Shown: positions 13,341 to 60,774 of the stretch, piece after piece
How positions within the stretch are numbered: the first letter of the stretch is position 1
Layout of the letters: every line of letters begins with the position of its first letter
Source: Macrostomum lignano
Lineage: Eukaryota
Direction: 5' to 3'
DNA length: 64,000 bases
Assembly: GCA_002269645.1 (NCBI GenBank)
Contig: NIVC01000369.1
Location: forward strand, 124,001 to 188,000
The notes under the pieces: model-generated
Seen by the model: the letters and a program-made list of their open reading frames with translations, nothing else
What the model was told of the DNA's origin: nothing
Databases searched by the model: none
Position numbers and translations under genes: made by a program

Positions 13341-13507
13341 GGAGGGCAGGGCTGAGGCTGGAAGCCAAGCAGAGCTCTCTGAAGATTTTCAATTCAGTTT
13401 GCAGTTGCATGGCAAATATTTTGCAGAAAATGCTTATGACTGAGGACTTTTCTGTTGCTGAACTTGAAATAGATGGAGAATGGTCACTTGGGTTTGCCAC
13501 TGACACT

Positions 13508-14698: not shown

Positions 14699-16802
14699 GA
14701 CAATTGTGGATCAGCTAGATTTAGCTGTTTCCGCTACCGCTGAGCGAGCACTCGACGTACTGATGCACGCAAGGCACAGCCTGGAAAATCGACATGTACG
14801 TTCCACAAACACCATGCCACGGACTACTTAAGAAAACGATGTACGTGATGGGTTTCGACCTTCGGGCCCCTTGTTCGGGAAGCCTTCGGGCCTCAGGCCT
14901 CAGAAATAAATCAATTAGAGTCCTGGCCCCCCACTCCTGTCAGATGGTCAGCCCCATGGTAGCTTGATCGTGTGGCGAGCAGTCTAGGTCCTATAGCTAA
15001 GAGAGGGACAGAGAGAGACGAGCAGGGAGAATTTTGAAGGTAGAAATTAGCTAATCCGCAGATCAACTAACTTGCTGCCACCAGCCCGTGCGCCCTGACT
15101 CACCACACCGGGGCTCTCGAAATCGGGCTTCTGACTAGAAGGGGCTTTGCACTTACCTGCCAACTAGTGTCTTTTTGCTGTCAATCTCGAAGTCATAGCC
15201 GATGGTAAGGGACACTGCTGGACTAGATCGCATTGGCCATGCAGGTACAGAGGGGACTTGTGCAGGGGATTCTTGCAGTCGAGTCTATGGGGTAGCTACA
15301 TGTACTATTACATTGCTAAATACGAAGATATGTACTTTTGGCCTTCAACGCGCCAACTAGCCTCTCATAGCGCTGATGATAGACTAACTCGAACATCAGA
15401 GACCGCGTGATTCATTACCCGAGCCGCTTGGCTAACCTAGAGTGCACAAAGTACATCTCTGGCGCCGATTATGCACTTATGGCAGTTTTGCTCACTGATT
15501 TGATAGATTGATCGACTGAGAACTGCCTTGCCATTGGTCCACTGTGACCGGCGCCTACTAGCTTAGCTACTCATCTGAGCCATCGGCGAACAAAGAAATA
15601 AAACCGATAAAAATAACTGTTAGATTTAACCTTCTCCTTAGATCGCTTCACACCTCAGATTGAATTGGAGTTTCAGACTACTAGCAGTATTATTAAGTGA
15701 TTTCTGCCTCAGCAACAGCACTACTGAACAAAATGAGCAAAAGTGTGCGCCTAATTCAGCTACTGAAACAGGGGACAGATAGGGGATCACCCAATCAAGC
15801 AAGTCTAGGTAGCCTCTCACCCAACCAATCAGAAACTCAACAGCCGGAGACCATGGTAATCCACAGTGACCGATTCGGCTTGATGCTCTGTAGCTGTAGA
15901 CTCGGGATGATGCTGTCACAATCTTCGCTGATAGCTAGCAGGTGATGCTCTTCACTTGATGTTCGCTGCTGATGACGGGGGGACTCGTCCTTGATGATGA
16001 TGGGGGGAGTCGCAATCCGGGGATCAAGAAACGACGGTCAGGCCGGGGAAAGAGTTCCTGGCCGAGAGCAAGCGAAAAGTTACGAAGTTGCAATCCGAGC
16101 GGGCCAAAAACTCCGGTTTAAAAAGCCGCCAACTGGACCGCAGTTTGTTATAATGGAACACGTCGATTCTGATTGGCTGAGCCGTTTTGTTAAAATGAGC
16201 GCCGAATTTTCTGATTGGCTAAGCTTGTTGCTACCAGAACCACGTGACCGAGAGATCCTATCAGTTCCCACAGGGTCGTAAAAAGATGACAGGTGCGGCC
16301 ATAAATCACTCAAATCGCAACAAAATGATTTATGACTTTTTGCGTAGGATTGACAGAAATTAATGAAAAAATATACATTAGAAAGCTCTTATTAAATAGA
16401 AAGTGAAGATAATGAAGAGAAATTGCAGCTAATCGCTAATCCCAAGGTACTTTTAGGGGTAAAAACGCATAGCTGTCAAAGCTGTCACACGCTTGAGTGA
16501 ACACGAACGATAGGCTCTGACCTCATAAATCTTGATGGCCTGTCAAAATGATGAGAAAAAAGCTACCGCCCGCATCCTCTCAGACCATCTGCGCCCGTCT
16601 CAACACTGATTGAGCGCAGGTGGCTGTCAGACCAGCTTCGAAAGCGATGATTTATGACCCAAAAAGCAATGCCTATGTTATTATGACTACTAGTATGGCC
16701 AGACATTATATCTAGTATAGATTCTATGACTATTCGCAGAAAAAGGATAAAAATGCGCAATCGCCCACTAGCTGTTAGTAGGCTAGTAGGTTTAGAGCCC
16801 AT

Positions 16803-17476
16803 NNNNNNNNNNNNNNNNNNNNNNNNNNNNNNNNNNNNNNNNNNNNNNNNNNNNNNNNNNNNNNNNNNNNNNNNNNNNNNNNNNNNNNNNNNNNNNNNNN
16901 NNNNNNNNNNNNNNNNNNNNNNNNNNNNNNNNNNNNNNNNNNNNNNNNNNNNNNNNNNNNNNNNNNNNNNNNNNNNNNNNNNNNNNNNNNNNNNNNNNNN
17001 NNNNNNNNNNNNNNNNNNNNNNNNNNNNNNNNNNNNNNNNNNNNNNNNNNNNNNNNNNNNNNNNNNNNNNNNNNNNNNNNNNNNNNNNNNNNNNNNNNNN
17101 NNNNNNNNNNNNNNNNNNNNNNNNNNNNNNNNNNNNNNNNNNNNNNNNNNNNNNNNNNNNNNNNNNNNNNNNNNNNNNNNNNNNNNNNNNNNNNNNNNNN
17201 NNNNNNNNNNNNNNNNNNNNNNNNNNNNNNNNNNNNNNNNNNNNNNNNNNNNNNNNNNNNNNNNNNNNNNNNNNNNNNNNNNNNNNNNNNNNNNNNNNNN
17301 NNNNNNNNNNNNNNNNNNNNNNNNNNNNNNNNNNNNNNNNNNNNNNNNNNNNNNNNNNNNNNNNNNNNNNNNNNNNNNNNNNNNNNNNNNNNNNNNNNNN
17401 NNNNNNNNNNNNNNNNNNNNNNNNNNNNNNNNNNNNNNNNNNNNNNNNNNNNNNNNNNNNNNNNNNNNNNNNNNNN
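16803..17476. other. Assembly gap (674 N) with near-identical duplicated flanks
   Basis: 16675-16802 and 17477-17603 are the same ~127-bp sequence with a few small indels. Confidence 0.97.
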
Positions 17477-18209
17477 ATGTTATTATGACTACTAGTATGG
17501 CAGACATTATATCTAGTATAGATTCTATGACTATTTCGCAGAAAAAGGATAAAAATGCAATCGCCCACTAGCTGTTAGTAGGCTAAGTAGGTTTAGAGCC
17601 CATGTGCTAGCGTGGATTTGGGAAAAAGTGCGTCCTCATCATACGTACATATAGTCCGTGCATCGCGCACCATGTACATGTACCGCAGCAGTGCATGCAT
17701 GAGAAGATATGGATCTGCACCCAGGCTGGTCAGGGACTAGGAAGCAATTGGATCGAGAACTACCAAGACAAACAAACGAGAAACCTGACGATCAAATCGG
17801 AGTGACCCCTCACTGCCAGGTCGTGAAAAATATATATTCTCGTATCCCTGCCATATGCAGTTCACCGTCTGACAGCACTGCCAAAATATAATATTGTTCG
17901 TTGTTGTTTGATATAGTTACATAATTAACCATGCAGTTTGGTATAAGCTGCAAATTACATTTGTTTTGCCGATTTAAACAAATCATTTATTAAATTGGTA
18001 ATTGTACATTTTTCGAAAGGTATTATACGTGTACAGTAATTTAATTTACCAGGTTCTCACATCAAATGAGCCAACAACTAAGGATCGCTAGTACAAACAA
18101 ATGAAAGCTAGTGTATACAAGGACGGCTTAGATAGGCTTATGTAAAAGCCATGGGATCATACGAAATCCGGCTTTACTTAAATGGCTGACCGACTTAAGA
18201 ACAAAGTAT

Positions 18210-25923: not shown

Positions 25924-27725
25924 CTGTCGGATGAGAAAAAAATCCATCTTCTAATGCTAATAAATGTACGAGAAATTATGTCTGCAATTTGTAACCTATA
26001 AAGGGGTATCAGTTCACTGGGAATGCCTCTGCTTTATCTGCAACACTTCTGTTCCTTTGACTGATTTTATCCGTAACACTCGAGTTTCTGGTTATAAAAC
26101 ATCCTTGGCAAGGAATGTCTTCATCAATTTTTTTGCTACTCGTAAATTGGTAGGTTTGTGTTGCTTTTGGCGCTGCAGGCAAAAGCAGACTCGTAATTTC
26201 CAACAAAATGTCAACCCCTAAGCAACCCGGAACAGGCATACATGCTCATATAAGGTGTACACTCATGAAAAGGCAAGACGAACCACAACACTCTAAGTTC
26301 AGCTTTAAGTGAAGTGGTTTTAAAGTGTGTTTGGTGTACATCCGTGATGCACTAGATTTTTTTTTCGTATGAATCTGTCAATTGGCACATTTTCGTTGGT
26401 GATGAGCTGTCATAATAATCAATTATTTCTAAGAGACATTGATAGAAATCAATCAGTTTAAAAACGTAAGGTATTTCTATTTATACATAAACGCTCGCTA
26501 TGCAGTCACTAGATACGGGTTCATTAACGCTCCGTGAATTCACAATCAACGATATAGGCATGCTTTTAAGACTCTCCCTGGCTCCCCTGACTGCATTCAG
26601 TTAGCGACTGATGAGAGTCCCACGCGCCTTGCAGCTATTCAATAAATCGTTTCAATTCTGCAAGACTACTTGCAGTTGAAATTTCAGAGGGGTATTGAAC
26701 ATTTTTAGCGATCCTTTCTACTGCTGTGATTATTTTTTTTTAAAAAGTCACAGCCGTTGAAGTGCGACAATGGCAAGTGGATTCGATGAATGAGAAGGCT
26801 CGCACTATTTTTTTAAGACAGCTAGCTCGTACGCATTGCTAACCATTTAAACTAGAAGCTTTTTACTGTTTATGGCAGTCGGGTGAGAAGCCACGCCCGT
26901 GTACAGCATTTTCCAGCCTAGTTAAACGCCCCCGCAGTGACACAGACGTTGCGATCATCGACAAATGAAAAATTAAAAGCTTTGTCTCTTTTGCACAGCT
27001 GAATCAAATCAATGGTATATTAACGTTATACTCCCCATTTATCTAGTCTCTCTCGGACTTGAAATGTAACCGTGAGATTACGTTAAATAGGTCTGGAGCA
27101 CAGAATACCACAGAATGCTCATTCTGCTACCCTGAAGAAAAAAATCTCAACGCGAAAATGATTTTTGTTTTGTGCTACTCTTCCTGTGAAGCTGTGGGAA
27201 AGTACGAGGGAGAAGAATCACCATAGACGATAGACGATAGAAGAGTAGCACATATGGTGCTTTAATTCGATACGTATTCTACTAGTCGAATGAGCATTCT
27301 GTGGTATTCTGTGTTCTGGAATGGACAGATGCCTGCAGTGTATGCAGAGAACAGAATAACAAAGACGAATCAAGAAGGGTTGAAAGACATTAATTAACAG
27401 GCAACGAAAATTCTGAGAGCGTAACGATTCATTGTTTCTTGCTGCAATGCTAGGCACCCAGGTTCATAGATTCCTCGCACTCAAATTTAGATTAGCCTGG
27501 GGACTGTGTAGTTTTCGAAAATAAGGGCCAACGCGGCCAAATGTCGCAAATTGTCACCAAGTGCCTCGTCGGTTCAACCGAACTCTTGCGACGTCAGGAT
27601 GGCTTGAAAGTTGATGTACGTTTACTCACAGGCTTAGAGGTACGTTTATTGGTACGTTTACCAGACAATAGTGTCCTTGTAGTCTGTTCAAATTAATAGT
27701 TAAAAAGCGTCATAAATAGACTCAC

Positions 27726-27957
27726 ACAGGCAGGTAAGAAGACGCTTAAATTCGCGACGAAATTTCACGGACATCGCGTTGTAGATAATTGGATTTATTG
27801 TAGAATTGACGAAGATGAGGCTACGGCTGATGGCCACGTACCACTCGGAGGCGATACGGCGGGTCCTGGGGGCGAAGCTGTTGTACACCACCATGAAGCG
27901 GTACGGCAGCCACAGGACTGCGAACATCACCACGACAACGAACAGCATCTTCACAAC
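27726..27957 (-). CDS. TRHR: TRH-receptor-like GPCR, exon 2 (TM6-TM7-H8)
   Basis: VVKMLFVVVVMFAVLWLPYR...NSTINPIIYNAMSVKFRREF matches vertebrate TRHR [20 protein letters not shown]...NSAINPVIYNLMSQKFR (recalled from memory). Acceptor CTCGCAG|, donor T|GTGAGT. Confidence 0.92.
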
Positions 27958-28092
27958 CTGCGAGAGGATTATGGAAATCATCTGTTAATAGGGAATGTTA
28001 AGGTTGCATGATAAAAGAAAAAAATCTAGTGCTGCCCTTGGCACACAAAAAATGTAAGATTAAACAAATGGAAGTGTTTTAGTGGTTTTCAA

Positions 28093-32608: not shown

Positions 32609-33369
32609 AAAGTGCTCAGAAATTTATGAAATTCACCGCCTAAATGAGAATTTACACGCAGATTCGAGGCTGGTGAGTCAGCCTGGCTCTGCCAGGTGGG
32701 ACTGTAAGCTGATGAGGAAAGCTCCACTCCTGATCCGCAGCTTAAGCGTAGAATTTCTTTCTTAGAAAGTTGAGCTTCTCTCTTCTTTGCGCTGACTAAA
32801 GGTTTTTCTTTAGTTGCAACATTATTGGAGATGTGAGGGATTAACTAAGGCTGGCTCTTGGGGATAGAAGTGTCTGAGGTCCAGATCCAGCTTTTCTGGG
32901 TAAGAGTGAGCCAAGCCTTTTAATAGTTACACCAGTAGATGGGAGTGGACAATGAGAAGGGGAGGAGTAGAGAAGGAGAGAAGGGGAGAGTGGAGAAGGA
33001 GAGATGTCATGATATATCTGATTACACGGGCAGTCACCATTGTAAACAGGGGGGGGGGAATTCCGGTGAACAGGGCATTAAACCGCGCTCATCCCCACAG
33101 ATAATGAAAGTCCGGAATTAAGAATTTCGAGGAATTAGGGCAAGGGCTAATTGAAATTCACTTCTAGGCGTGGTTTATTCTGTTCCCATCAAGTAGCCAT
33201 TTGTTTACCTTATTTTCTGATGAACTAGGATTTTCTGATGAAATAGGATTTTGTGTTGAGAAATTTCTGATGAGCCACAGAGTCTTTTGAGGCGGCCAAC
33301 CAAATCCTCGATTAATTGCCTTCAAATCCGGCTCAGCTGCATTCCAGAGCTGCCGGCATAGCAACTGTC

Positions 33370-34094
<725 letters not shown>

Positions 34095-35144
34095 GCCAAT
34101 ATCCTGTGCGTGGAACACAGTCCAGTCATTATCTGGATTTATATCGCTGCTACTCAACCCAACTGAACCAAACGCTCTGGGACCTGTAGTCGGGATTCAC
34201 TGCGGTAGGTGGTGTGTTTTCTATTTCCTCCACCTGCATTTCCAAAGCGAGCTAAGCGGGATTGCCTCTCTTAGGGACAGTCATTTCTCGTTCCAGCCAA
34301 GCCCGCCCGTTTTCCCACTCACTCGGGACCGAGACAGCTCACTTTGCCTCGCTTGTCTCACCTCCCTCCAGCTCACTCAATGCCTCGCTTTGCAATCTAT
34401 TTTTCTTTACCAAGGCCTGCTTGCCTTCCCTAGCGGCAAAATAATTAATGGACTTTGTGCGTTTTTTAACCGTGGCCATTTTTCACTTTGTTCCTATTCG
34501 AATAATTCAATTATTGGTTGGCGATATGTCTCGTATAACTTCAATAGCCTATATTCAACTGGAACCCTGGTACTCCAACAGGGCCTTAGGCAGGGTAGTT
34601 GCTATGGGGAACTGCTAAAATTGGAAACAGGAGCGCCTAATCAAGGTCAGGCGCAACGCCTTCGGCGACAACGTCCCACAGGCCCTCATGAGGGTGTACA
34701 GTACGGTTCGAGAGTAAACTAATAAAGCTGATTGTCGCTTTTCTTTGATGCTTTAATATCAATTCTATGAAGCATTCGATTCTTCCTTACTTACACATTG
34801 GTAGCCTTACAATCAATGAAAATGGTTCCTTTATTTAAGCTTATTTACGAGTCTGTCTATATTACAGCGATACATTGTGAAGCTTGTAGTTGTGCAAAAT
34901 CGTTCGCTTCATTGCATTCCTTCTGTCCCATCGCGTGTACCCAACTGACTAACAGGGTGCATTAGCAAAATGTTGCTCATGAAAGCGCCAATACACACGC
35001 CTAATCCATCCGGCTTAGGTGGCCTCCCGATCTCGCCAGCTCAGCGTATCATTAAAAAGCTTTTTTTATTTTATTTCTTTAGATTAATGGAACTTAGTCA
35101 GTCGTGTGAAAATGATTACTGAGTAGTTGTATGTGTTGACTCGC

Positions 35145-35921
35145 CTGAATTCGACTCTGCAGAGCTCGCGTAGCGTTCGAAGTCCTCAACGGTTCGGAGC
35201 CCTGACAGGTGCTCGAGGAGCGGAACAGGACCCTGGCAATGGCTGAGTACAGAACCGACAGCAGTACCAGCGGAATGAAGTAGAACAGCGCCAGGTCGCC
35301 CAGGTACAGAGACATGTAGGCCCGGCTGCTTCTATCCAGCTTGTGACCGCACCGTTCAATGGTGACATTGGTGTCAGCCACGGGTTTAGGCAGCAGAGTG
35401 GCCAGGTAGAACCAGGGTGAATTGTACAGCAGGCCGAATATCCAGATTCCAGCAATGATTCTCTTGGCCCGTTTCACCGTGCAGGCAGTCTGAGCAGTGA
35501 TGGGGTAGCAGATGGCTACGAATCGTTCCACGGAGAAGGCCGTAATGGAAAAGGCCGACGTGTTGACTCCGACGTAGGACAGATAGACAGAAATCTTGCA
35601 CCCGATGATGCCGCACAGAACCCAACGATCTCTTGTAACATTTAGCTCGGAAATCATGGTAGCAACGCCCACAACTAGGGCTATGAGATCGGCTAGCGAT
35701 AGGGACACGAGGTAGCAGTTAGTTGGCGTCAGCATCCGAACTCGAGCTGTGGCCACAACTACAATTACCAGAATGTTGCCGAATACACCGATGCAGAGTA
35801 GCAGCAGGCAGAGGCTGGAGATGGTGGCTCTCAGAGGTACTGGGTAGTACAGTTGATCGTAGGTCAGGTTCCATTCCTGATGGGCCGACAGAAGCTCGTC
35901 TATTGACAGCGGAGAGTCCAT
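35145..35921 (-). CDS. TRHR: TRH-receptor-like GPCR, first coding exon seen (TM1-TM5, ICL3)
   Basis: GNILVI, TPTNCYLVSLSLADL, SITAFSVERFVAICYP, RAKRIIAGIWIFGLLYNSPW and YFIPL are TRHR-type motifs. 777 nt from the ATG at 35921 to a CAG|GCGAGT donor. An upstream acceptor at ~35947 implies a further 5' exon. Spliced product ~390 aa. Confidence 0.93.
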
Positions 35922-36775
35922 GCCTGCTTGGGCCAACGAGTCAGGACCTGTAGAGCATGGGAAGAGAGTGAACTGGAGTGGTTGTATGGGATAAAAAGCA
36001 GTGAGGATAAGACGAAAACGGGGTTTTTATAACCAATTTTCAGCAGCCAATAGGAAAGCGTCATGGAACTGTTTTTTCAGCGAACTGGATCACAAAGATG
36101 GGAAAACTATAGACATCCTATAGCCAATCCGTCTGCATTTTCATGTGTTGGTTAACATGTGGTTGGTAAGCAAAACTCCAGCCAAAATTAGAATATTTAT
36201 TATCTTTGTTCAACTTGTACTGTAGATGAATCTCAAACAAAGAACAAAACTGCTTCACTTTTGCCACAATATCTTGCACTAAAACTGCTGAAACTAGTCA
36301 TGAAGGTAAATTTTTTGACAAAACATGCAGTCAAGTTAGAATGAGCAAAGTGGCTTGGGAAACAGGAAAAACAAATCAATACATGCATACGAGCGTACTG
36401 AACTTACTTGCTGACAGGTGGACTTCAGACTTCGATTCACTTCGCGAAATCGTTGAGAAAAACTTTAGAACCACTTCAAAAAAGGCAAAAAAGCAGAAAA
36501 TTCCAGACAGAGAGAGTCCTCCCGAGCACTTAGGAGGGGCACGCATACAATTTCGAAGTGGGCAATACTCCACGCAACAGATTGCCTTAAGCGTTTGCTT
36601 AGTTTTAAAACAGAATGGACAGAGACTTAAAATAGAAAATGGGTTTTACAAAGAGCTTCATTCTTCATTGACTCTCTCGTCAGCTCAAAATCGTATGGAT
36701 AGATAGATATGAAATAAAAAGGATGCAAACTGGTGTGAGATCCACTGTTATGAGTACACGTCATATCAATAACTC

Positions 36776-38080
<1,305 letters not shown>

Positions 38081-38770
38081 CACACATACTATAGCTAAAC
38101 AATATGTTGAGCATTAAGGTTCCATTCGCGGTGCAAAATATGTTAACCAGTTAAAACAGTTGTGCCAGACAAATGAATTTCCTTCAAATATTTGTCTTAG
38201 ATGTGACGCTATCAGTGGTAGCCTAAAAGGAATAAATAAGAAATGAACTACAGGTGCTTTTACAGCGCCAGATCAGCTAATCTAATCTGCTCTTGTCACA
38301 GAACCTGTCAATTCCTCATCGGAGCCTTAGCCAGAAAAAAACTGCAAGATTGATTTTCGACAGTGCAACCCAAGCTCAAAGTGTGCTCTGTCTGCAGATT
38401 AAATCGAATTTAAGTAAATTTTTGGGCCGAACAGCGCAAAACCTATGCAATATGTCGAAAAATTGACTAACTAAGGCTTATGAGAAACTTAAGAATGATT
38501 GCCCAACCATGTGTGTTGAAAGAGAAAGCTCAAGCCTACTGCCTGCCTGTTGAAGGTTTCTATTAAAAGTTCGTCTATTGATTGAAGTCGCTTTATAGCT
38601 TGGGCAGACTGGCAGACCCAAAGAGCTGCCATTAAAAACTGTTTGCATTGAAAGTTTTCTTACCTTAAAGTGGCTGCCTGGCTTGATTGCTCTCTCTGTG
38701 TGGCTACTGTGTCTGACTTAGTAAAGAAAATGGGCAATAAAATTCGTTACTTTCTACTTGTTCAAGTAGA

Positions 38771-40593: not shown

Positions 40594-40818
40594 CGCATCT
40601 GAAGGCTGCGTACGGCTGTTCAGTCCAAGGACTGGGGGTCGCCGCACACACCTTCAACTAGCCCAGCTAATGCTGGCACCCATTTTACAGCTGGGTGAAC
40701 TGAAGCAATGCAGAGTAGAGTGTCTTGCTCAAGGACACAGATTGTTTCGACTTGGTCGAGAATCGAACCCCCGACCTTTCAGTGTCGTGAGTTCGACGCT
40801 CTAACCACTAAAGGCTAC
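40594..40818 (-). mobile_element. tRNA-derived CORE-SINE, copy 1
   Basis: Minus strand: A box TAGTGGTTAG, B box GGTTCGATTCTC, then TGTGTCCTTGAGCAAGACACT...CTTCAGTTCACCCAGCTGTAAAATGGG resembling the MIR CORE. A similar copy lies at 46410-46645. Confidence 0.85.
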
Positions 40819-42656: not shown

Positions 42657-42843
42657 ATGGTTACAATAAGCTTTCATCAGGTAGCTATTGTTACGCTTTC
42701 CTCTGCCATTGTCTGCGGCCTCATTAGCCTATTCACGGCTGACTTCTTTATCAAGTTTGATGTTGTCGGATTCAATTTCATTAAACACAAAATTGGATAT
42801 TGCAACGCAACTCCGATGGGTCTTTTCGATTCGAGTGCTACAG
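42657..42843 (+). CDS. Claudin/PMP22-like four-TM protein, exon 1
   Basis: ATG...MVTISFHQVAIVTLSSAIVCGLISLFT (TM1). Donor G|GTAAGT, phase 1. Confidence 0.75.
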
Positions 42844-42984
42844 GTAAGTGAGTTGTGAGAATATATATGTTTTGAGCAGTTTGAAATGAACTCATTTAGG
42901 GGTCAGTATAATATCCTACTGCTGGACACACTGAGTCAGTGCATTAATAATTAAGCTTATATTATAATGACATTTGAATTTCAG

Positions 42985-43122
42985 CAATTAAAGTACTTCT
43001 TATCGGCGGCTTAAGCTGTGCGGGCTGCTGCCTTCTACTCGAGTTCATCTCCGTGACTGTGCACTCGGCTAGAGAGAATGCCAGCCTGAAAGCTCTGTGC
43101 ATGATTGTCTGCTTTGCTGGCA
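42985..43122 (+). CDS. Claudin/PMP22-like protein, exon 2 (TM2, start of TM3)
   Basis: TTTCAG| ... A|GTGAGT, 138 nt, phase 1-1. IKVLLIGGLSCAGCCLLLEFISV...LKALCMIVCFAG. Confidence 0.78.
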
Positions 43123-43177
43123 GTGAGTGCATTAAATTACCTTCTGAAATACATGTACGAGAATACCTTATAGACAT

Positions 43178-43731
43178 GGATGGCTAATTATCTTGAGGGG
43201 GGGCGGAAGGCTAATTATCTTGGGGGGGGGCGGAAGGCTAATTATCTTGGGGGGCGTAAGGCTAATTATCTTGGGGGCGTAAGGCTAATTATCTTGGGGG
43301 CGGAAGGCTAATTATCTTGGGGGGGCGGAAGGCTAATTATCTTGGGGGGGGGCGAAAGGCTAATTATCTTGGGGGGGCGAAAGGCTAATTATCTTGGGGG
43401 GGCGAAAGGCTAATTATCTTGGGGGGGCGGAAGGCTAATTATCTTGGGGGGGGAAGGCTAATTATCTTGGGGGGGGGGCGGAAGGCTAATTATCTTGGGG
43501 GGGAAGGCTACTAATTATCTTGGGGGGGGAAGGCTAATTATCTTGGGGGGGGGGAAGGCTAATTAATCTTATATTGGGGTGGAAGGCTAATTATCTTGGG
43601 AGGGGGGCGGAAGGCTAATTATCTTGGGGGGGGGGGCGGAAGGCTAATTATCTTGAGGGGCGGAAGGCTAATTATCATGGGGGGGGGAAGGCTACTACTA
43701 ATTATCTTGAGGGCGGAAGGCTAATTGTCTT
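43178..43731. repeat. G-run minisatellite (GGAAGGCTAATTATCTTG5-11)n in intron 2
   Basis: About 22 units with a variable-length G tract. Confidence 0.95.
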
Positions 43732-43961
43732 CACGAATCCAGAAGCTGAATATTAGTCGTCATAATTTGGCAGAGTCTTAATATTTCTTTCTCACTATAG
43801 AATGCTTTTGAAGACAACTGTATTGATAGGATCGGGAACAAACGCTCTCATTAAACATTTGAATACAGCTGTAAATAAATTTCAATACATGCAACTAATA
43901 TTCAGATTATCTAACTGAATTCATATCTAGTAGACTTGTAGTGTCTGTACTTTAACTTCAG

Positions 43962-44116
43962 GCGTGACACTGGTGACTGCGCTGGCTCTAGCGAAGCCTT
44001 CATCTGTGAGACCCGACGGAGTTGCCCGCGGCTACAGTTTTCTAATGGCGGCGGTTAGCTGCGTGTTCACCATTGAATCGCTGGTGTTCTACGTTATTCA
44101 ATGGCGCTGCCAGTAG
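43962..44116 (+). CDS. Claudin/PMP22-like protein, exon 3 (TM3-TM4, stop)
   Basis: ACTTCAG|GC, then VTLVTALAL...GYSFLMAAVSCVFTIESLVFYVIQWRCQ*. GYSF before TM4 is typical of the PMP22/claudin superfamily. Total 480 nt = 159 aa. Confidence 0.78.
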
Positions 44117-44640: not shown

Positions 44641-44707
44641 TTAATAGCCAAGAGCCGTCAGTTCCTCGCCAATTCGCGTCAGATATGTCGGGTCAGGATA
44701 GCCATGC
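44641..44707 (-). CDS. Macro-RING-DTC protein, last exon
   Basis: CTCCGCAG|G, then HGYPDPTYLTRIGEELTALGY*, the canonical Deltex C-terminus. Phase 2 matches. Confidence 0.9.
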
Positions 44708-44798
44708 CTGCGGAGAATATCGAATTCAGGGTGTCAAAATTGAAATAAAAAACTAGCTGGTGCTTGCAAGTAATTTAACAACCAATATAGAAGTATAG

Positions 44799-45858
44799 GA
44801 GCGCCAGCTACAGAGGGGCAACAGCTACAGAGGGGGCGCCAGCTACAGAGGGGCAACAGCTACAGAGGGGCAACAGCTACAGAGGGGGCACCAGCTACAG
44901 AGAGAGGCGCCAGCTACAGAGAGGGGCACCAGCTACAGAGGGGGCACCAGCTACAGAGGGGCGCCAGCTACAGAGGGAGAGAGAGGGGCACCAGCTACAG
45001 AGAGGGGCGCCAGCTACAGAGGGAGAGAGAGGGGGCGCCAGCTACAGAGAGGGAGAGAGGGGGCGCCAGCTACAGATTAGGGCGCCAGCTACAGAGAGGG
45101 AGAGAGGGGCGCCAGCTACAGAGAGGGGGCGCCAGCTACAGAGGGGGCGCCAGCTACAGAGGGGCAACAGCTACAGAGGGGGCACCAGCTACAGAGAGGG
45201 AGAGAGGGGCGCCAGCTACAGAGAGGGAGAGAGGGGCGCCAGCTACAGAGAGGGAGAGAGGGGGCGCCAGCTACAGAGAGGGAGAGAGGGGCGCCAGCTA
45301 CAGAGAGGGAGAGAGGGGCGCCAGCTACAGATTAGGGCGCCAGCTACAGAGAGGGGGCGCCAGCTACAGAGAGGGAGAGAGGGGGCGCCAGCTACAGAGA
45401 GGGAGAGAGGGGGCGCCAGCTACAGAGAGGGAGAGAGGGGGCGCCAGCTACAGAGAGGGAGAGAGGGGGCACCAGCTACAGAGGGGCAACAGCTACAGAG
45501 GGGGCGCCAGCTACAGAGGGGCAACAGCTACAGAGGGGGCGCCAGCTACAGAGGGGCAACAGCTACAGAGGGGGCACCAGCTACAGAGGGGCGCCAGCTA
45601 CAGAGAGGGAGAGAGGGGCGCCAGCTACAGATTAGGGCGCCAGCTACAGAGAGGGGGCGCCAGCTACAGAGAGGGGCGCCAGCTACAGAGAGGGGCACCA
45701 GCTACAGAGGGGGGCGCAAGCTACAGAGAGGGGCGCCAGCTACAGAGGGGGTGCCAGCTACAGAGGGGGCCCAGCTACAGAGGGGGAGAGAGGGGGCGCC
45801 AGCTACAGAGGGGGCGCCAGCTACAGAGGGAGCGCCAGCTACAGAGGGGGGCGCCAGC
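44799..45858. repeat. GC-rich minisatellite (GCCAGCTACAGAGGGGGC)n filling the last intron of the Deltex-like gene
   Basis: About 50 units of 17-26 bp, beginning right after the donor site. Confidence 0.95.
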
Positions 45859-45862
45859 TTAC

Positions 45863-46213
45863 CCTTCAGGTCCTCCATCGATGCGAGTCTTGTGATGCAC
45901 AGTGGCCCACGTGATAGTATTATCCATGCCAGTAGTCGCACTGGTGCCAATAGTAAACACCGCCCGACCACGAAAGGCTGCTTGAAGTCGTTCAACAATC
46001 GCCCGACCTTCTGGCGAGTCGGGAAAATAAGTGACTCGAGACACGCCTCGATATGGCAGGCCGGGATTCGGGTGCTCGCGTCCTTGAACACCCGGCCCGA
46101 AAGTGTACGTGACTACTTGAGTTGCGTATCCGGGATGACCAGGCAGACTCAAGGCCTCTTTGGTGACTGTCATGGTTCCATTGGCTGGCTGACTGCCAAC
46201 TGCCGGTCTGTAT
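45863..46213 (-). CDS. Macro-RING-DTC protein, Deltex C-terminal (DTC) domain exon
   Basis: QPANGTM...YTFGPGVQGREHPNPG..Y.G..R.TYFPDSPEGR...AF.GR.VFTIGTSATTG...ITW..VHHKT. 351 nt, phase 2-2. Confidence 0.93.
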
Positions 46214-46409
46214 CTGTGTTTAGGTCAAGTGACGTCATCTAATATTCAATAATTGAATTTAGAATATGTATAAATCCAAATCAAATTTAAGTAGGCTTAA
46301 AATACCACTAAAATGAAGCAAATTTGTACTTTTAGACTCTAGGCTGAACTGCGAGGAAATACTCTGGTAGAAAACAAACTTTACAATCGATAAAGTACAA
46401 GATGAGCAC

Positions 46410-46645
46410 CGCATCTGAAGGCTGCGTACAGCTGTTCAGGCCAAGGTCTGGAGGGGGGGGGGGTCGCCACACACATTCTCAATTACCCCAGCTAATGCTG
46501 GCACCCATTTTACAGCTGGGTGAACTGAAGCAATGCAGAGTTAAGTGTCTTGCTTAAGGACACAAATTTTTTCCGACTTGGTCGAGAATCGAACCCCCGA
46601 CCTTTCAGTGGTAAGTCCAACGCTCGAACCACTATGGTACAAGCC
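46410..46645 (-). mobile_element. tRNA-derived CORE-SINE, copy 2 (intronic)
   Basis: Head GGCTTGTACCATAGTGGTTCGAGCG...GGTTCGATTCTCGACCAAGTC retains acceptor-stem pairing. CORE-like body and 3' tail are shared with copy 1. Confidence 0.85.
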
Positions 46646-46798
46646 CCTTGATACTATACTTACAGTAGGACTAGAATATTACACGTCTACAATAAAATAA
46701 TGCACGTTTATTTGATACTCTACTGATAGTAGAAATATAGGCAAATTACGATAATAATTCAGAATAACAGTGTATTAGCAATGTAACAATCATGGTAC

Positions 46799-47538
46799 CT
46801 GTCCATGCACAGCGGGCACAGTCCATTGCCAGGCGCAGCCGGGTCGTTCAGTCTGCGCACGCACGTGACGCACAATTGGCCGCGATTGCAATGAAAAGCG
46901 GCAGCAGGTTTGGCCATAGACAGCGGCTCGCAGCACAGTTCGCAGTCTGCGCCAAATTCCTCATCATCCGCGTGTAAAGAAACCGCCGCCGCCGCTGCTG
47001 CTGTATTGTTAGGACGCGACGCGAACTCGCGACCTTCTACCGAAAGATTCCGCGACGGCGGCGGCAGCACTCTGGGCAGTTGAACGCCAAATCTGGCCTC
47101 TAAAACTCGACCGAGAGTGGCCAGAGTCTCCAAGCCTAGATCGCAGATGCACAATCGGCGAAGGTCGCCGGTTCGATTCCTGCTGCCGGCAGAATGAAAC
47201 GCTTCGGCTAGTACGTGAGCAAAATCTTCGGACCGATCTGTCCAATAGGGCAAACTGGCTCCGATCGGTGTCATTCCAACCACTTGAATGCCGAGTTCAG
47301 TAGAGAGCTGAGAAAGAGTTCTCAGCAGAGCATTTATAACATCTTTCATAACTTCTTTGAACGCATTGTGATCAATAGTCTGCTCCAGTCGACTATCGTT
47401 TGGTAGCGCTAGGAACAGGATGTGACGAGCTGGCAGCTGCGAGCCCGGAGGCAAGGTCACAAGCCGAGTATCGCCGAACTTCAAGTTCTGACCTTGAAGC
47501 GCCTCCCGACACAGGCGCAGCAACTGCTGCTGACCCGA
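46799..47538 (-). CDS. Macro-RING-DTC protein, exon with macrodomain C-terminal half and RING finger
   Basis: CCGCAG|TCG...GAC AG|GTACCA, 740 nt. GS.LPARHILF and VGMTPIGAS (macro); CELC...HC...CVTC...CPLC (RING). Confidence 0.9.
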
Positions 47539-47570
47539 CTGCGGGGTGGGGGAGCGGCACTCAACTATGT

Positions 47571-47712
47571 TTGAGACCCGTAACTCCAATCTCACCTATA
47601 GATAATCGAGTGTCTGAAAGACCCATAGCTCCAATCTCACCCCTAGATAATCGAGTGTCTATGAGACCCGTAACTCCAATCTCACCCATAGATAATAGAG
47701 TGTCTAAGAGAC
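47571..47712. repeat. ~46-bp tandem repeat x3 (GAGACCCGTAACTCCAATCTCACCYATAGATAATCGAGTGTCT) in intron
   Basis: Three near-identical units. Confidence 0.85.
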
Positions 47713-47786
47713 CATTCAGAATCTCAAAGATCACAATCGTGATATCTCTGCAATTAAAACTCCATAGTTAAATTCTATTTATTCAC

Positions 47787-48004
47787 CTTGGCAGCCACAA
47801 TCCTGGCCAGGCCAAAGTTAAGCGACAGAGCACAGCTAGTGGTCACAATCAGCGCGTCACACTGCAGAGTTGTGATATCGCGCGGCTCAACTCGAAGTGA
47901 GCATCGATCGTTCAATGCCAGCTCAAAATCGTACGGTCCAAGATCGCGAAGGTACTGAGTGTCCACAGGTACAACAGCGCAAGCGCCTTCTACAGCTGGG
48001 GCAT
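47787..48004 (-). CDS. Macro-RING-DTC protein, exon with macrodomain N-terminal half
   Basis: TTTCAG|AT ... AAG|GTGAAT. LRVEPRDITTLQCDALIVTTSCALSLNFGLARIVAAK aligns to the macro consensus V..GDIT...DAIVNAAN..L..GGGVA.AI. Confidence 0.85.
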
Positions 48005-48088
48005 CTGAAATAATTAATATTTTCATTTAGGCCACATATTTGAATTGTTTCAAATGTATGCTTTAAAAAATAACAATTAGTTAGTTAC

Positions 48089-48386
48089 CCTGAGACACTA
48101 CATCTGGAAATAGAGGCCTTCTTGAACGACTGGTAGAGCTGATGACAGAAGAGGCTCGGCTCGCTGTGGACGTTGGCTGCTCAGAGGCCCATTTTCTCAA
48201 AGCTGACTGAGCACAGCTCAGCACTTCTGGATGGCAAGCATGAAGCATTGCCAGCTTTGGTTCTGTTAACTGCATTTCAACTTGATATTGCTCATCTAGA
48301 TCAACTTTGATTGGTGCCAGTTCTTGTTCAGTGAATTTTCTAGGCAGTTTAACCTTGCCAGATATGGTTGGAGGCAAGTCAGGCTC
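48089..48386 (-). CDS. Macro-RING-DTC protein, N-terminal region exon
   Basis: TTTTAG|GAG ... CAG G|GTAACT, 298 nt, phase 0-1 compatible with its neighbours. Confidence 0.75.
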
Positions 48387-48460
48387 CTAAAATAGAAAAT
48401 AATAGAAAACACTTTCAAGACATAAGAACAAAATAAAGATATTTAAAGTCACTGTCTTAC

Positions 48461-48534
48461 CTCTTTTCTTTCTACTATTTTTGCTGGCACAGTATTGTTA
48501 ATTAGAAATTCATCTGATCTTCTTGAAAATGTAA
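48461..48534 (-). CDS. Macro-RING-DTC protein, 74-nt exon
   Basis: CATTTTAG|TT ... GAG|GTAAGA, open frame TFSRRSDEFLINNTVPAKIVERKE, phase 1-0. Confidence 0.6.
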
Positions 48535-50002
48535 CTAAAATGAAAAAAAATTATATAAATTGAGTCTTAAAAACATAAATTACATAAAGCCTTGTTAATA
48601 TTACTTAGAATTGTTAGTTTTTAAGATCAAAAGATTAAATTGACCTTATTTAATTTATTTATATATTATACCAATTCTTATGAATCAGTATCTTATCTAT
48701 AGCTGCTCCCTTATCTATAAATATCCTTTTTTATTTGTAGCTAGCCTCCTATTTGTTATTCAAATTGTCAACTAGGGCATATATGTGTAACTGCTGGCTA
48801 ACCTAGCTAATCTGGCCACTATAAATTGTGGTAGACTAGGGGTAAGTCTAAAAAATCTCTATCCCAAACAATATATATACTAATTTTGCACTGTTTGTCT
48901 GTTTGTCTGTCTGTCTTTTTGTTGTCTTTGATTTTTTCAAGAACTGTCTGGCCATTTTATCAAATTTGCTTTAAAAATTCCTACTTTTTTGGGGATCATG
49001 CATAACATTTTTTGATGAAAAATTGAATGGGAAGTAGGTCAAATATTCAAAAAATATTTTTTTTGATTTTAATAGGCACTCTGTTTATAAATTTAATTGC
49101 TCAGTTTAACCATTTAAGCCTCTACTTGGCCAATGTACAGTATAGAATGTATATTTACAATAAAGTTAAGGAGTTTTATGACCCTTTATATAGTAGGCTT
49201 AAAATTTGTGGGGTTGTTTGACTTTCATTATCATTTACCAACCAGTCTAATATAGACAATTGATAAAGAGTGGGTACATAGGGAGGTTAAAAAACTGGCC
49301 TAAAATTTATCAACCCCCTAAACTGCTTTGATCTTGTTTGTCTAATAATGTGAATGATATGATAATATGATTTGAATGATCATGTGAGTTCCAAATAATC
49401 AAATTCAAATTCAATTGAATTACAACAAAGTAAAAAGGTATTTTAAAAAGAATGAAAAAGAATGATAAACATTTAGCTAGTTAATCATTAAATATTAACC
49501 TTTAAAATCACAAAGTTTTTTATACAAAACTCAAATTCTCTATACACATTATATATCCTATAGTTTAGAAAGCAAAATTTATGCTAGGATTTCCTTTCAT
49601 CCCTTTAGCCAGGATTTCCTGGCATACAAGGGTACTTTCTAACATATTTTTTAGTATACATCAATATATATCTCGGCATACATTACACAGCAAAAACATT
49701 GTGTTAATGACACATTTAATTAGTTCTAGTATACAAATGAGGTCCTGTAATTTTTACCAGCATTAGACCAGCATACACTAATAGTTGTACATAATCCAAA
49801 CTATGGTGAGCCAATTGCAAATACAAAATCATTTGACAACCATTTGATAAAATGCTAGTTGACAAAGTGACCAGCACCCATTTGTAGCTGGTATCCCCAA
49901 TCACCCAATCAGTAGTAATACTACTACATTCTTACTTAAGGGTTGCAATAATAATGTTGGCAATGCACCGAAGAAAATTCTAATATTGACAGAATTACTC
50001 AC

Positions 50003-50177
50003 CTTTGTTCTTGAAATACAGCTTTGCTAATGTGTGGTCCCCATTGAAAGGTTTGACAACACACAAAAATTCTTGCGAAAAAAGATCTGAGAAGTACGAA
50101 TGCACAAGTTCCCAACTGACTTCATTTGGGTTCGAGTGTCGTGAAGATTTAGGAATAGAAATAGTTAAGGTAAACAT
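50003..50177 (-). CDS. Macro-RING-DTC protein, putative first coding exon
   Basis: ATG...MFTLTISIPK...LAKLYFKNK G|GTGAGT. Phase 1 matches the next exon. Intervening exons cannot be excluded. Confidence 0.5.
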
Positions 50178-59775: not shown

Positions 59776-60034
59776 GGAGGGTTCGTAATTTAGTAAAACT
59801 TAATGGATGAAAGTTTAGTAATCCACATGATTCAAGAAGGGCTTGATATCACAAATTATTAAAAACAGTTTTGTAAAATTACCCTAATTAAAGCTATTTT
59901 CAGGGTTTAACAAACATAATATGCTTAAAAATTACACCGACTAATTACTGAATCTATTAATTGAGTAGTGAATTCAGGGCATGTCGTGAACAGCAATCAT
60001 AAACATTTATTTTTTATGATTTTAACTTCCCCAG

Positions 60035-60473
60035 AAACGACTCGGACATGGCAATCTACGAACCATCGCTTGGCATTCTCGCTTCCCTGCTTCGCGGCAA
60101 TACCGACTGCCAGAATTTGGTTCGCAATTCTGACAAGTTTCACTGGCTAAAAAAGCAGCTATTGAAAAATTTGGAGAATCCGTCATTAAGCATTACTATT
60201 TATTCAATGTCGCTAATCTACTATCTTGGTGGGTGTGGTGAACAGCTGTTTAACTGTCCAACCAATTCCTATCAGAGCATTCAAGCTGTGTTTCATGTAC
60301 TACTGACTGGCAGTTGCAATAGTAGATGGGCGCCATTGTATTCCGCTAATTTGCTTATTGATATTGCCACTTCTGGCTTCAATCAGGACTTGTTGCCTAC
60401 TTATGAGTATTTGCCAGTCTGCTTGGGACCGCTGTTGGATCAGCTGACAGCGGAGAAGCTGCTTCAAGGCAAG
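60035..60473 (+). CDS. CIP2A: CIP2A exon (conserved ARM core); the gene presumably continues beyond
   Basis: PSLGILASLLRGN, GEQLF, QAVFHVLLTG, YSANLLIDI and TYEYLPVCL align with human CIP2A PCLGLLANLCRHN, GEKLF, QLIFNILING, YSVDLLMDL and RYEHFSSCL (recalled). CCCCAG|A ... AAG|GTGAGT. Confidence 0.9.
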
Positions 60474-60774
60474 GTGAGTGAAATTTTGTGCCTATTTTGT
60501 AAAATTGTTCTCAGATCAGTTTTAATATAATCATCTCAAATAATTAGAACACGATACTAAGATCCCTGTGTCTTCTGACATCCAGTTGCCTCATCCTTGT
60601 CTCTTCTTAACTCCCATTCTCCCAGATCCCATTCTCAATTCCCAGAACCCATTACCTTCTCAGATCCCCTTACCTTCTCAGATCCCCTTACCTTCCCAGA
60701 TCCCATTATCTTCCTAGATTCCATTCTCTTCCCAAATCCCATTCTATCTCTCTTCCCAAATCCCATAGATAGAG

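What the first reader, a model, noticed from the sequence alone, without database searches (positions are those of the whole stretch)
44641..50177. Single-chain Macrodomain-RING-Deltex C-terminal protein: PARP9/DTX3L-like reader and ligase fused in one gene
Seen: seven phase-compatible exons (50003-50177, 48461-48534, 48089-48386, 47787-48004, 46799-47538, 45863-46213, 44641-44707) total 1923 nt, about 640 aa, with a macrodomain directly before a RING-DTC module. Established: in vertebrates DTX3L (RING-DTC) lacks a macrodomain and gets ADP-ribose-binding macrodomains from its partner PARP9; Deltex RING-DTC modules ubiquitylate ADP-ribose/NAD+, and the complex acts in interferon/antiviral and DNA-damage responses. 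Inference: this invertebrate protein is a Rosetta-stone fusion that could recognise ADP-ribosylated targets and ubiquitylate them without a partner, pointing to an ADP-ribose/ubiquitin immune or repair module.
Basis: partly seen in the sequence, partly recalled or inferred. Interest (0 to 1): 0.8.

Follow-up and report, generated by a model that had tools for sequence, protein, structure and literature searches.

The report
Flatworm Deltex ligase with hidden macrodomain
This is a real, already annotated gene of the flatworm Macrostomum lignano that joins a very diverged ADP-ribose-reader-like (macro) domain to a Deltex-type ubiquitin ligase. A 2026 preprint describes this layout as the older form of DTX3L, so it is a useful example rather than a discovery.

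Summary
The seven minus-strand exons splice through GT..AG introns into a 640-aa ORF. That ORF is 100% identical to GenBank PAA84524.1 (Macrostomum lignano BOX15_Mlig007561g3), and the annotated gene span is exactly 44641-50177.

The C-terminus is an unambiguous Deltex DTC domain (Pfam E 2.8e-46). All DTX2 ADP-ribose-contact and catalytic residues are kept. It follows a RING-like zinc finger that has seven canonical Cys but lacks the canonical His ligand.

The "macrodomain" is not found by the Pfam Macro HMM. Other evidence supports it:
- an exhaustive phmmer search hits an amphioxus PARP14-like third macrodomain (E 1e-5);
- profile-profile comparison gives 96% probability, and reversed or shuffled controls fail;
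- an AlphaFold model matches solved macrodomains (TM about 0.8).

The macrodomain keeps the adenine-binding Asp but has lost the catalytic Asn and both glycine-rich loops. It is at best a reader, not a hydrolase.

One exon encodes the second half of the macrodomain plus the RING, so the fusion is genuine. M. lignano also has a paralogue with the same layout.

Novelty is low. The gene is annotated, and a 2026 preprint reports that DTX3L orthologues outside tetrapods carry a macrodomain, which was lost when PARP9 arose.

Verdict: new member of a known kind, interest about 0.3.

The parts
44641..50177 (-). Whole gene (CDS span): 7 exons, 640 aa, M. lignano BOX15_Mlig007561g3
   Evidence: Spliced ORF and GT..AG introns. 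100% identity to PAA84524.1. The annotated span is identical.
50003..50177 (-). Exon 1 (aa 1-59): start codon and first part of an unassigned N-terminal region
   Evidence: In-frame stop just upstream of the ATG. Conserved in paralogue P0003 (MF[TS]..F[LI]CV[VI][KR]P[FY]). No Pfam, PDB or RRM match.
48461..48534 (-). Exon 2 (aa 59-83): N-terminal region
48089..48386 (-). Exon 3 (aa 84-183): helical segment, low-complexity Ser-rich linker and the conserved RRPLFP motif (aa 172-177)
   Evidence: Alignment with the paralogue. AF2 helices at 103-152 with modest confidence.
47787..48004 (-). Exon 4 (aa 183-255): N-terminal third of the macro-fold domain, including RDITT (D225) and the degenerate loop 1 (VTTSCALSLNFGLA)
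   Evidence: BLASTP to all three macrodomains of amphioxus PARP14-like P0004. Alignment A6. hhalign.
47059..47538 (-). Exon 5, first part (aa 256-415): remainder of the macro-fold domain
   Evidence: hhalign 96% over 189 columns. AF2 pLDDT about 85-95. Foldseek hits to macroH2A, PARP14 and PARP9 macrodomains.
46807..46944 (-). Exon 5, later part (aa 454-499): RING-like zinc finger (C454, C457, [H471] C472, C478, C481, C496, C499), in the same exon as the macrodomain C-half
   Evidence: Cys residues align with the RING Cys of DTX3-like proteins. Sub-threshold Pfam zf-RING_4/zf-RING_2. NOT4 RING E 0.011. A single 278-aa ORF covers both domains.
45863..46213 (-). Exon 6 (aa 502-619): main part of the Deltex C-terminal (DTC) domain, with R561, W604, H608
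   Evidence: Pfam PF18102 E 2.8e-46. DTX2/DTX3L/DTX1 structures at 1e-39 to 1e-31. Residue roles from PMC7442474 and PMC7615817.
44641..44707 (-). Exon 7 (aa 619-640 plus stop): end of the DTC, with H620-G-Y-P-D and E634

Best explanation
This is a genuine single gene of Macrostomum lignano encoding a Deltex-family E3 ubiquitin ligase. Its layout is: unassigned N-terminal region (aa 1-185), highly diverged macrodomain (about 205-415), variant RING (454-499), canonical DTC (508-639).

Shown: the gene structure, the DTC identity with all ADP-ribose-contact and catalytic residues, the macro fold, and the fact that macrodomain and RING share one exon.

Inferred mechanism: the RING recruits an E2~ubiquitin. 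The DTC pocket (R561, W604, H608, H620) holds the ADP-ribose of a mono- or poly-ADP-ribosylated substrate. The H608/E634 pair activates the 3'-hydroxyl of the adenine-proximal ribose, so that ubiquitin is esterified onto ADP-ribose, as shown for DTX2 and DTX3L.

The macrodomain keeps the adenine-contacting Asp (D225) and the fold, but has lost the catalytic Asn and both Gly-rich loops. It is not a hydrolase. It most likely acts as a second, in-cis ADP-ribose reader or substrate-docking module. WWE domains fill that role in DTX1/2/4, and PARP9/PARP14 macrodomains fill it in trans for tetrapod DTX3L.
For: Gene model. A paralogue family (P0003/P0143, Mlig011245/011146, 34-37% identical) has the same four-part layout.

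DTC: Pfam PF18102 at 157 bits against a cutoff of 25. PDB DTX2 4.9e-39 and DTX3L 9.6e-38. R561/W604/H608/H620/E634 align with DTX2 R535/W578/H582/H594/E608. Their roles are given in PMC7442474 and PMC7615817.

Macrodomain:
- Exhaustive phmmer against 1.84 billion representatives found, beyond M. lignano itself, amphioxus PARP14-like (E 1.3e-5) and a sea-slug Macro protein (E 1.6e-4).
- The region aligns in register with all three macrodomains of the amphioxus protein.
- hhalign of a profile of the two flatworm paralogues against 32 bona fide macrodomains gives 96% probability, E 2.5e-9, over 189 columns.
- Reversed and column-shuffled controls give <0.5%.
- AF2 pLDDT is about 85-95 over 205-415, and Foldseek TM is about 0.8 to macroH2A, PARP14 MD1-3 and PARP9 MD1.

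RING: seven Cys are in register with DTX3-like RINGs. The hydrophobic residue after C1 (L456) and the Pro after C7 (P497) are kept. The Cys pattern and the His-Cys pair are conserved in the paralogue.
Against: - Pfam Macro does not hit, even at E <= 10. A profile of the two flatworm sequences alone finds no macrodomain in the PDB.
- The AF2 alignment contained real macrodomains, so the model and its Foldseek matches are not independent of the homology inference.
- Loop 1 (NAAN..HGGG becomes VTTS..LNFG) and loop 2 (PAISTGIFG becomes TPIGASLPYW) are more degenerate than in human PARP14 macrodomain 2 as displayed. ADP-ribose binding may be lost.
- RING ligand 4 (His) is missing from its canonical place, and all Pfam RING scores are below gathering thresholds. 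E2 recruitment is not assured.
- There is no expression or biochemical data. No paper mentions the gene.
Confidence: 0.6

Rival explanations
1. The macrodomain is a degenerate relic that no longer binds ADP-ribose. It serves as a structural spacer, a protein-protein interaction surface, or an autoinhibitory lid for the DTC. All ADP-ribose recognition is done by the DTC.
For: Loss of the Asn-x6-GG[VLI] loop and of the G-x-G loop. No Pfam Macro hit. AF2 confidence dips at 300-310 and at 350-360; the 350-360 dip covers part of loop 2. The DTC alone binds ADP-ribose in DTX2 (PMC7442474).
Against: The adenine-contacting Asp (D225) and T227, G247 and P301 are invariant across all 32 sequences of alignment A6, including bona fide macrodomains. 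The domain is kept at 34% identity in two paralogue families, with conserved motifs around the pocket. From literature knowledge rather than a test here, human PARP14 macrodomain 2 also lacks the classical loop-1 motif (sequence shown) and still binds ADP-ribose.
Confidence: 0.3
2. The protein is a pseudo-ligase. The variant RING cannot bind two zinc ions or an E2, so the protein only reads ADP-ribose (DTC plus macrodomain) and acts as an adaptor or competitor.
For: The canonical His ligand 4 is absent and the C3-C5 spacing is altered. All RING HMM scores are below threshold.
Against: Seven Cys plus an adjacent His471 are conserved between paralogues that are only about 35% identical. E2-contact positions (L456, P497) are retained. 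The catalytic E634 of the DTC would be pointless without ubiquitin transfer, yet it is conserved. Variant RINGs such as the NOT4 finger, the best RING-type structure match (that NOT4 is a functional C4C4 RING is literature knowledge, not tested here), are functional.
Confidence: 0.08
3. The macrodomain is an active ADP-ribosyl hydrolase (eraser) fused to the ligase, as in PARP14 MD1 or PARP9 MD1.
For: Fold similarity to PARP9 MD1 and PARP14 MD1.
Against: The conserved Asn of the NAAN motif is Ser239, and HGGG is LNFG. These positions are nearly invariant in the 28 MacroD/YmdB-type sequences of A6.
Confidence: 0.02
4. The gene model is an artefact that merges two neighbouring genes, a macrodomain gene and a RING-DTC gene.
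For: Exons 1-2 lie in AT-rich DNA (28-37% GC) and exons 3-7 are 48-56% GC. Exons 1-3 have no homologue outside M. lignano.
Against: Exon 5 is one open reading frame encoding macrodomain aa 256-415, the linker and the RING. The exon 4/5 junction falls inside the macrodomain, and homology runs across it. A paralogue at other loci has the same N-terminus-to-DTC layout in a separate set of database entries.
Confidence: 0.02

Closest known systems
DTX3L-PARP9 (and PARP14) complex of tetrapods
   Same: Both combine macrodomain(s) with a RING-DTC ligase that ubiquitylates ADP-ribose. The DTC catalytic and ADP-ribose-binding residues are conserved. The nearest relative of the flatworm macrodomain is a macrodomain of a PARP14-like protein.
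   Different: Here the two functions are on one chain. No PARP catalytic domain, KH or PARP14-type RRM domain was detected. No PARP gene was found in the 64-kb window. There is one macrodomain, not two or three, and it is much more degenerate.
Macrodomain-bearing DTX3L orthologues of non-tetrapod animals (bioRxiv 10.64898/2026.04.23.720386)
   Same: The architecture is the same in principle: a macrodomain in the same polypeptide as RING-DTC. The preprint says this macrodomain was lost from DTX3L when PARP9 emerged.
   Different: The preprint reports an RRM in most metazoan DTX3L orthologues, and none is detectable here. Flatworms are not mentioned in its text. Orthology of this protein to DTX3L, rather than DTX3 or an unassigned Deltex, was not established. 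The best database matches are named DTX3.
DTX1/DTX2/DTX4 (WWE-WWE-RING-DTC)
   Same: An ADP-ribose reader module lies N-terminal to RING-DTC on one chain, and the DTC chemistry is the same. DTX2 RING-DTC is the best solved-structure match.
Cnidarian RRM-RING-DTC 'DTX3' proteins (e.g. Acropora XP_029192768.2)
   Same: RING-DTC is 45% identical.
   Different: They carry a PARP14-type RRM/NID domain instead of a macrodomain.

Membership tests
Deltex family E3 ligases (RING-DTC) | C-terminal DTC domain (Pfam PF18102) above the gathering threshold | tested here: met
   157.4 bits against a cutoff of 25, E 2.8e-46, profile positions 2-132 of 133. DTX2, DTX3L and DTX1 structures at 1e-39 to 1e-31.
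Deltex family E3 ligases (RING-DTC) | ADP-ribose-contact residues and the catalytic His/Glu of the DTC (DTX2 R535, W578, H582, H594, E608) | tested here: met
   R561, W604, H608, H620 and E634 are in register. Residue roles come from PMC7442474 and PMC7615817.
Deltex family E3 ligases (RING-DTC) | Canonical C3HC4/C3H2C3 RING immediately upstream of the DTC | tested here: inconclusive
   Seven Cys are in register with DTX3-like RINGs. The His ligand 4 is absent from its canonical place, and H471 precedes C472 instead. Pfam RING models reach only 12-16 bits against cutoffs of 27. The pattern is conserved in the paralogue.
Deltex family E3 ligases (RING-DTC) | E2-dependent ubiquitylation of ADP-ribose or NAD+ | not testable with these tools
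   Needs biochemistry.
Macrodomain (Pfam PF01661 / macro fold) | Match to the Pfam Macro HMM | tested here: not met
   No hit for the whole protein or for the isolated region, even at E <= 10.
Macrodomain (Pfam PF01661 / macro fold) | Statistically supported remote homology to bona fide macrodomains | tested here: met
   phmmer E 1.3e-5 and 1.6e-4 against a library of 1.84 billion sequences. hhalign 96%, E 2.5e-9; controls <0.5%.
Macrodomain (Pfam PF01661 / macro fold) | Three-layer alpha/beta/alpha macro fold | tested here: met
   AF2 pLDDT about 85-95 for aa 205-415. Foldseek E about 1e-10 and target-normalised TM 0.75-0.84 to many solved macrodomains. Caveat: the input alignment contained macrodomains.
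Macrodomain (Pfam PF01661 / macro fold) | ADP-ribose pocket motifs: adenine Asp, Asn-x6-GG[VLI] loop 1, G-x-G/aromatic loop 2 | tested here: inconclusive
   The Asp is kept (D225). Only the last Gly of loop 1 is kept (G247), and its Asn is Ser239. Loop 2 reads TPIGASLPYW instead of PAISTGIFG.
MacroD / PARP14-MD1-type ADP-ribosyl hydrolases | Conserved Asn and Gly-rich catalytic loop | tested here: not met
   Ser239 and L244-N245-F246-G247 replace N and HGGG.
DTX3L orthologue group | N-terminal RRM / KH-like domains shared with PARP14 | tested here: not met
   No Pfam hit in aa 1-153 at E <= 10. hmmsearch of the N-terminal profile against RRM-bearing DTX and PARP14 proteins found nothing. PDB profile search found nothing.
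DTX3L orthologue group | Phylogenetic placement with DTX3L rather than DTX3 or others | not tested
   PDB scores for DTX2 and DTX3L are almost equal, and the best database hits are named DTX3.
DTX3L orthologue group | Genomic linkage to a macro-PARP gene (PARP9/PARP14) | tested here: not met
   The neighbours are a CIP2A-like gene and a 159-aa gene without a Pfam match. tblastn with amphioxus PARP14-like proteins finds no PARP domain in the 64 kb.

The most novel reading that the evidence does not exclude
The flatworm protein is a self-sufficient reader-writer. Its cryptic macrodomain, invisible to standard HMMs, still binds mono-ADP-ribose and delivers substrates in cis to the DTC. It would then be a natural single-chain minimal equivalent of the PARP9-DTX3L machine. 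It could be used to dissect how macrodomain reading and ADP-ribose ubiquitylation are coupled. It would also mark an ADP-ribose/ubiquitin defence or repair module in a regenerating invertebrate that lacks interferon.
Probability: 0.3. Interest if true: 0.5.

Novelty: new member of a known kind. Interest (0 to 1): 0.3.

Why it matters
That would be convenient for structural and biochemical work on ADP-ribose ubiquitylation. It also shows that standard domain annotation (only DTC is called in the databases) misses a macrodomain in both M. lignano paralogue families, so surveys of macro-Deltex architectures that rely on Pfam will undercount them. It does not change current understanding. The link between ADP-ribose readers and Deltex ligases is established, and macrodomain-bearing DTX3L orthologues have been reported.

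Tried and rejected
- Single-sequence AlphaFold of the full protein gave mean pLDDT 35.6 and was unusable.
- The word-indexed homologue search with the full protein returned only the protein itself and one homeologue, probably because low-complexity words dominated.
- The same tool with the RING-DTC alone gave 11 Deltex proteins, none with a Macro domain. The prevalence of the architecture therefore could not be counted directly.
- The third search, with a macrodomain profile, was swamped by bacterial MacroD/YmdB proteins. It was useful only as an alignment source.
- A profile of the two flatworm macro regions alone against the PDB found no macrodomain.
- A full-length MAFFT alignment mixing macrodomain and DTC homologues misaligned macrodomain C-halves onto the DTC and was discarded.
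- The N-terminal 160-185 aa gave no Pfam, PDB or RRM signal. The idea that it is a PARP14/DTX3L-type RRM is unsupported.
- The hit to P0005, a bacterial DUF11/SdrD repeat protein at E 4e-5, was judged a repeat or compositional artefact.
- A literature search for the gene identifier found nothing. Searches for other explicit descriptions of macro-RING-DTC proteins found only the 2026 preprint.
- ARAGORN finds no intact tRNA in the window.

Full report

Yes. Every internal intron begins GT and ends AG, and the phases are compatible. An in-frame stop lies just upstream of the ATG at 50177.

The 640-aa translation is identical over its full length to GenBank PAA84524.1 / UniRef A0A267GGM3. That entry is 'hypothetical protein BOX15_Mlig007561g3', UniProt name 'E3 ubiquitin-protein ligase', from the free-living flatworm Macrostomum lignano. 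On contig NIVC01000369.1 of assembly GCA_002269645.1 the called gene spans 5537 bp, which is exactly window 44641-50177. The exon model is therefore not a chance reading. It reproduces the public annotation base for base.

**2. Anatomy.**

In protein coordinates the exons cover aa 1-59, 59-83, 84-183, 183-255, 256-502, 502-619 and 619-640.

(a) *DTC domain.* Residues 508-639 match Pfam PF18102 (Deltex C-terminal domain) at 157 bits against a cutoff of 25, E 2.8e-46, over profile positions 2-132 of 133. They match the solved RING-DTC structures of DTX2 (4.9e-39), DTX3L (9.6e-38) and DTX1 (3.8e-31). Counting along the DTX2 alignment:
- R561, W604, H608 and H620 correspond to DTX2 R535, W578, H582 and H594. 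These contact the diphosphate, adenine and proximal ribose of ADP-ribose (PMC7442474).
- H608 and E634 correspond to H582 and E608, the pair proposed to activate the 3'-hydroxyl for ubiquitin transfer (PMC7615817).

(b) *RING-like finger.* Residues 454-499 lie exactly where Deltex proteins have their RING. C454, C457, C472, C478, C481, C496 and C499 align with zinc ligands 1, 2, 3, 5, 6, 7 and 8 of DTX3-like RINGs. The hydrophobic residue after ligand 1 (L456) and the Pro after ligand 7 (P497) are retained. The canonical His ligand 4 is missing, and a His (H471) sits directly before C472 instead. This 'FHC' arrangement is also present in the paralogue. Pfam RING models reach only 12-16 bits against cutoffs of 27. 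The best RING-type structure hit is the NOT4 finger at E 0.011. I treat the RING as a conserved variant whose activity is unproven.

(c) *Macrodomain.* The region between about 205 and 415 is the domain in question.
- Against: the Pfam Macro HMM does not hit it, either in the whole protein or as an isolated segment at E <= 10. A two-sequence profile of the flatworm paralogues finds no macrodomain in the PDB.
- For: an exhaustive phmmer of aa 1-433 against 1.84 billion representatives returned only five proteins. These were a homeologue, a paralogue, a Branchiostoma PARP14-like protein (E 1.3e-5), a Plakobranchus protein with a Pfam Macro domain at the matched place (E 1.6e-4), and one bacterial repeat protein that I regard as spurious.
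- For: pairwise BLASTP places the flatworm segment in register with all three macrodomains of the amphioxus protein, best with the third (1e-10).
- For: a profile-profile comparison of the two flatworm sequences alone against 32 bona fide macrodomains gave 96% probability, E 2.5e-9, over 189 columns. Reversed and eight column-shuffled versions gave <0.5%.
- For: AlphaFold2 with an alignment of the paralogue plus macrodomains modelled aa 205-415 at pLDDT about 85-95. Foldseek matched macroH2A, PARP14 macrodomains 1-3, PARP9 macrodomain 1, Af1521 and others at E about 1e-10, with target-normalised TM 0.75-0.84. Because the alignment contained real macrodomains, this is corroboration, not an independent test.

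Conclusion: it is a macro fold, but a strongly diverged one.

(d) *Pocket motifs* (alignment A6; residue numbers).
- Kept: the Asp that contacts the adenine amino group in characterised macrodomains (D225 in 'RDITT'; this role is from established knowledge), together with T227, D232, G247, A249 and P301. All of these are invariant across the 32 aligned sequences.
- Lost: the 'NAAN..HGGG' loop, which reads 'VTTS..LNFG' (Ser239 for the conserved Asn).
- Lost: the 'PAISTGIFG' phosphate loop, which reads 'TPIGASLPYW'.

Hydrolase activity is therefore very unlikely. Ligand binding cannot be decided from sequence. Human PARP14 macrodomain 2 also lacks the classical loop 1 (sequence shown) and is a reader by literature knowledge, but the flatworm loops are more degenerate still.

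(e) *N-terminal region.* Residues 1-185 have no detectable relative outside M. lignano and no Pfam, PDB or PARP14-type RRM signal. The paralogue conserves an N-terminal beta-alpha-beta-beta segment and an 'RRPLFP' motif at 172-177.

**3. Is the fusion genuine?**

Yes. Exon 5 (46799-47538) is one open frame that encodes macrodomain residues 256-415, a roughly 40-aa linker and the whole RING. The exon 4/5 junction lies inside the macrodomain and the 5/6 and 6/7 junctions lie inside RING-DTC, and homology runs straight across all three.

A second M. lignano gene family (Mlig011245/011146; P0003/P0143, 739-742 aa, 34-37% identical) has the same N-terminus / macrodomain / RING / DTC order. The Mlig007561 family has three near-identical copies, g1-g3.

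**4. Surroundings.**

Within 10 kb the called neighbours are a CIP2A-like gene and a 159-aa gene with no Pfam match. Elsewhere the window holds:
- an LTR-retroelement pol (RT, RNase H, integrase);
- a protein-kinase gene;
- an ankyrin-repeat exon;
- a rhodopsin-type GPCR;
- many mini- and microsatellites and an assembly gap.

tblastn with amphioxus PARP14-like proteins finds no PARP catalytic domain in the 64 kb. There is no genomic coupling to a macro-PARP here, unlike the tetrapod DTX3L-PARP9 locus.

**5. Most likely mechanism.**

Shown: the protein has a DTC with an intact ADP-ribose pocket and catalytic His/Glu, preceded by a conserved RING-like finger and a macro fold.

Inferred from DTX2/DTX3L biochemistry (PMC7615817, PMC7442474, PMC10810221): the RING brings E2~Ub, the DTC binds the ADP-ribose on a modified macromolecule, and ubiquitin is esterified to the 3'-OH of the adenine-proximal ribose.

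Inferred from architecture: the non-catalytic macrodomain provides a second ADP-ribose (or ADP-ribosylated-substrate) docking site in cis. This is analogous to the WWE domains of DTX1/2/4 and to the PARP9/PARP14 macrodomains that work with DTX3L in trans.

The main rival (0.3) is that the macrodomain no longer binds ADP-ribose and is structural or regulatory. Smaller rivals are an inactive RING (0.08), an active hydrolase (0.02) and a gene-model artefact (0.02).

**6. Comparison with what is known.**

It is a member of the Deltex family by its DTC, with a caveat on the RING. It has a macro fold but fails the Pfam Macro membership test. It works like the PARP9-DTX3L pair collapsed into one chain.

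A 2026 preprint on DTX3L evolution (10.64898/2026.04.23.720386) states that most metazoan DTX3L orthologues have an RRM plus RING-DTC. [quoted passage not shown] A macrodomain on the same chain as RING-DTC is thus already described and is interpreted as the older state.

I could not assign the flatworm protein to the DTX3L clade:
- PDB scores for DTX2 and DTX3L are nearly equal.
- The best database matches are named DTX3.
- No RRM or KH domain is detectable.
- The preprint's text does not mention flatworms.

I could not count macro-DTC proteins directly with the available searches.

**7. Novelty and verdict.**

The gene is real and already annotated, and its class of architecture is already reported. 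New here is the recognition that both M. lignano paralogue families carry a cryptic, degenerate macrodomain that domain databases miss, together with an atypical RING.

This is a new member of a known kind. Interest is about 0.3. It would rise to about 0.5 if the macrodomain proves to be a functional in-cis reader, which would make the protein a convenient single-chain model for ADP-ribose-directed ubiquitylation.

Noticed in passing
window 44797-45859 (intron 6 of the gene): A GC-rich 17/18-bp minisatellite (unit about AGGGGCGCCAGCTACAG, about 65 copies, with 28- and 35-bp higher-order variants) fills almost the whole 1155-bp last intron. It starts about 3 nt after the exon 6 donor and gives this intron 64% GC, against 21-42% for the other introns.
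   Followed up: partly
window 47436-47538 (start of exon 5): An in-frame alternative 3' splice site (CAG|CTG at 47437|47436) lies 102 nt inside exon 5. The UniProt model of a homeologue (A0A1I8GDN0 = P0002) uses the equivalent site and lacks aa 256-289, which would delete a core part of the macrodomain. Whether this is a real isoform or an annotation difference is unknown.
   Followed up: partly
window 46459-46595 (intron 5) and 40634-40769: Two copies (90% identical over 115 nt, plus an identical 16-nt GGTTCGATTCTCGACC box) of an interspersed repeat with a tRNA-like T-arm motif. This suggests a tRNA-derived SINE. ARAGORN calls no intact tRNA.
   Followed up: partly
window 47573-47713 (intron 4): A 45-bp tandem repeat, 3.1 copies, 86% matches.
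   Followed up: no
protein aa 172-177 (window about 48107-48124): The short motif RRPLFP is invariant between the two paralogue families, inside an otherwise poorly conserved low-complexity linker between the N-terminal region and the macrodomain. It may be a linear docking motif or a cleavage site.
   Followed up: no
window 43178-43694: A 25-bp minisatellite (GGAAGGCTAATTATCTTGGGGGGGC, about 20 copies) lies inside the span of the neighbouring 159-aa gene, which has no Pfam match (window 42657-44116, + strand).
   Followed up: no
window 1329-4097 (- strand) and 12658-13512: Retroelement pol remnants: RVT_1 plus RNase H (2359-3360), integrase core (1329-2087), and a second integrase fragment (12658-13512). 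These indicate LTR-retrotransposon insertions.
   Followed up: partly
window 5379-6294 (-), 10806-11522 (-), 27703-27984 and 35097-36026 (-), 60003-60527 (+): Other coding exons in the window: a protein kinase domain split over two ORFs, an ankyrin-repeat exon, a rhodopsin-family GPCR in two exons about 7 kb apart, and a CIP2A N-terminal domain exon.
   Followed up: partly
window 6944-10487; 33291-34719 and 36630-38150; about 16800-17480: A roughly 3.5-kb tandem array with strong C-over-G skew that is open in three frames. Long arrays that translate as (SIYL)n lie on both sides of the GPCR exon. There is also a run of N (assembly gap).
   Followed up: no
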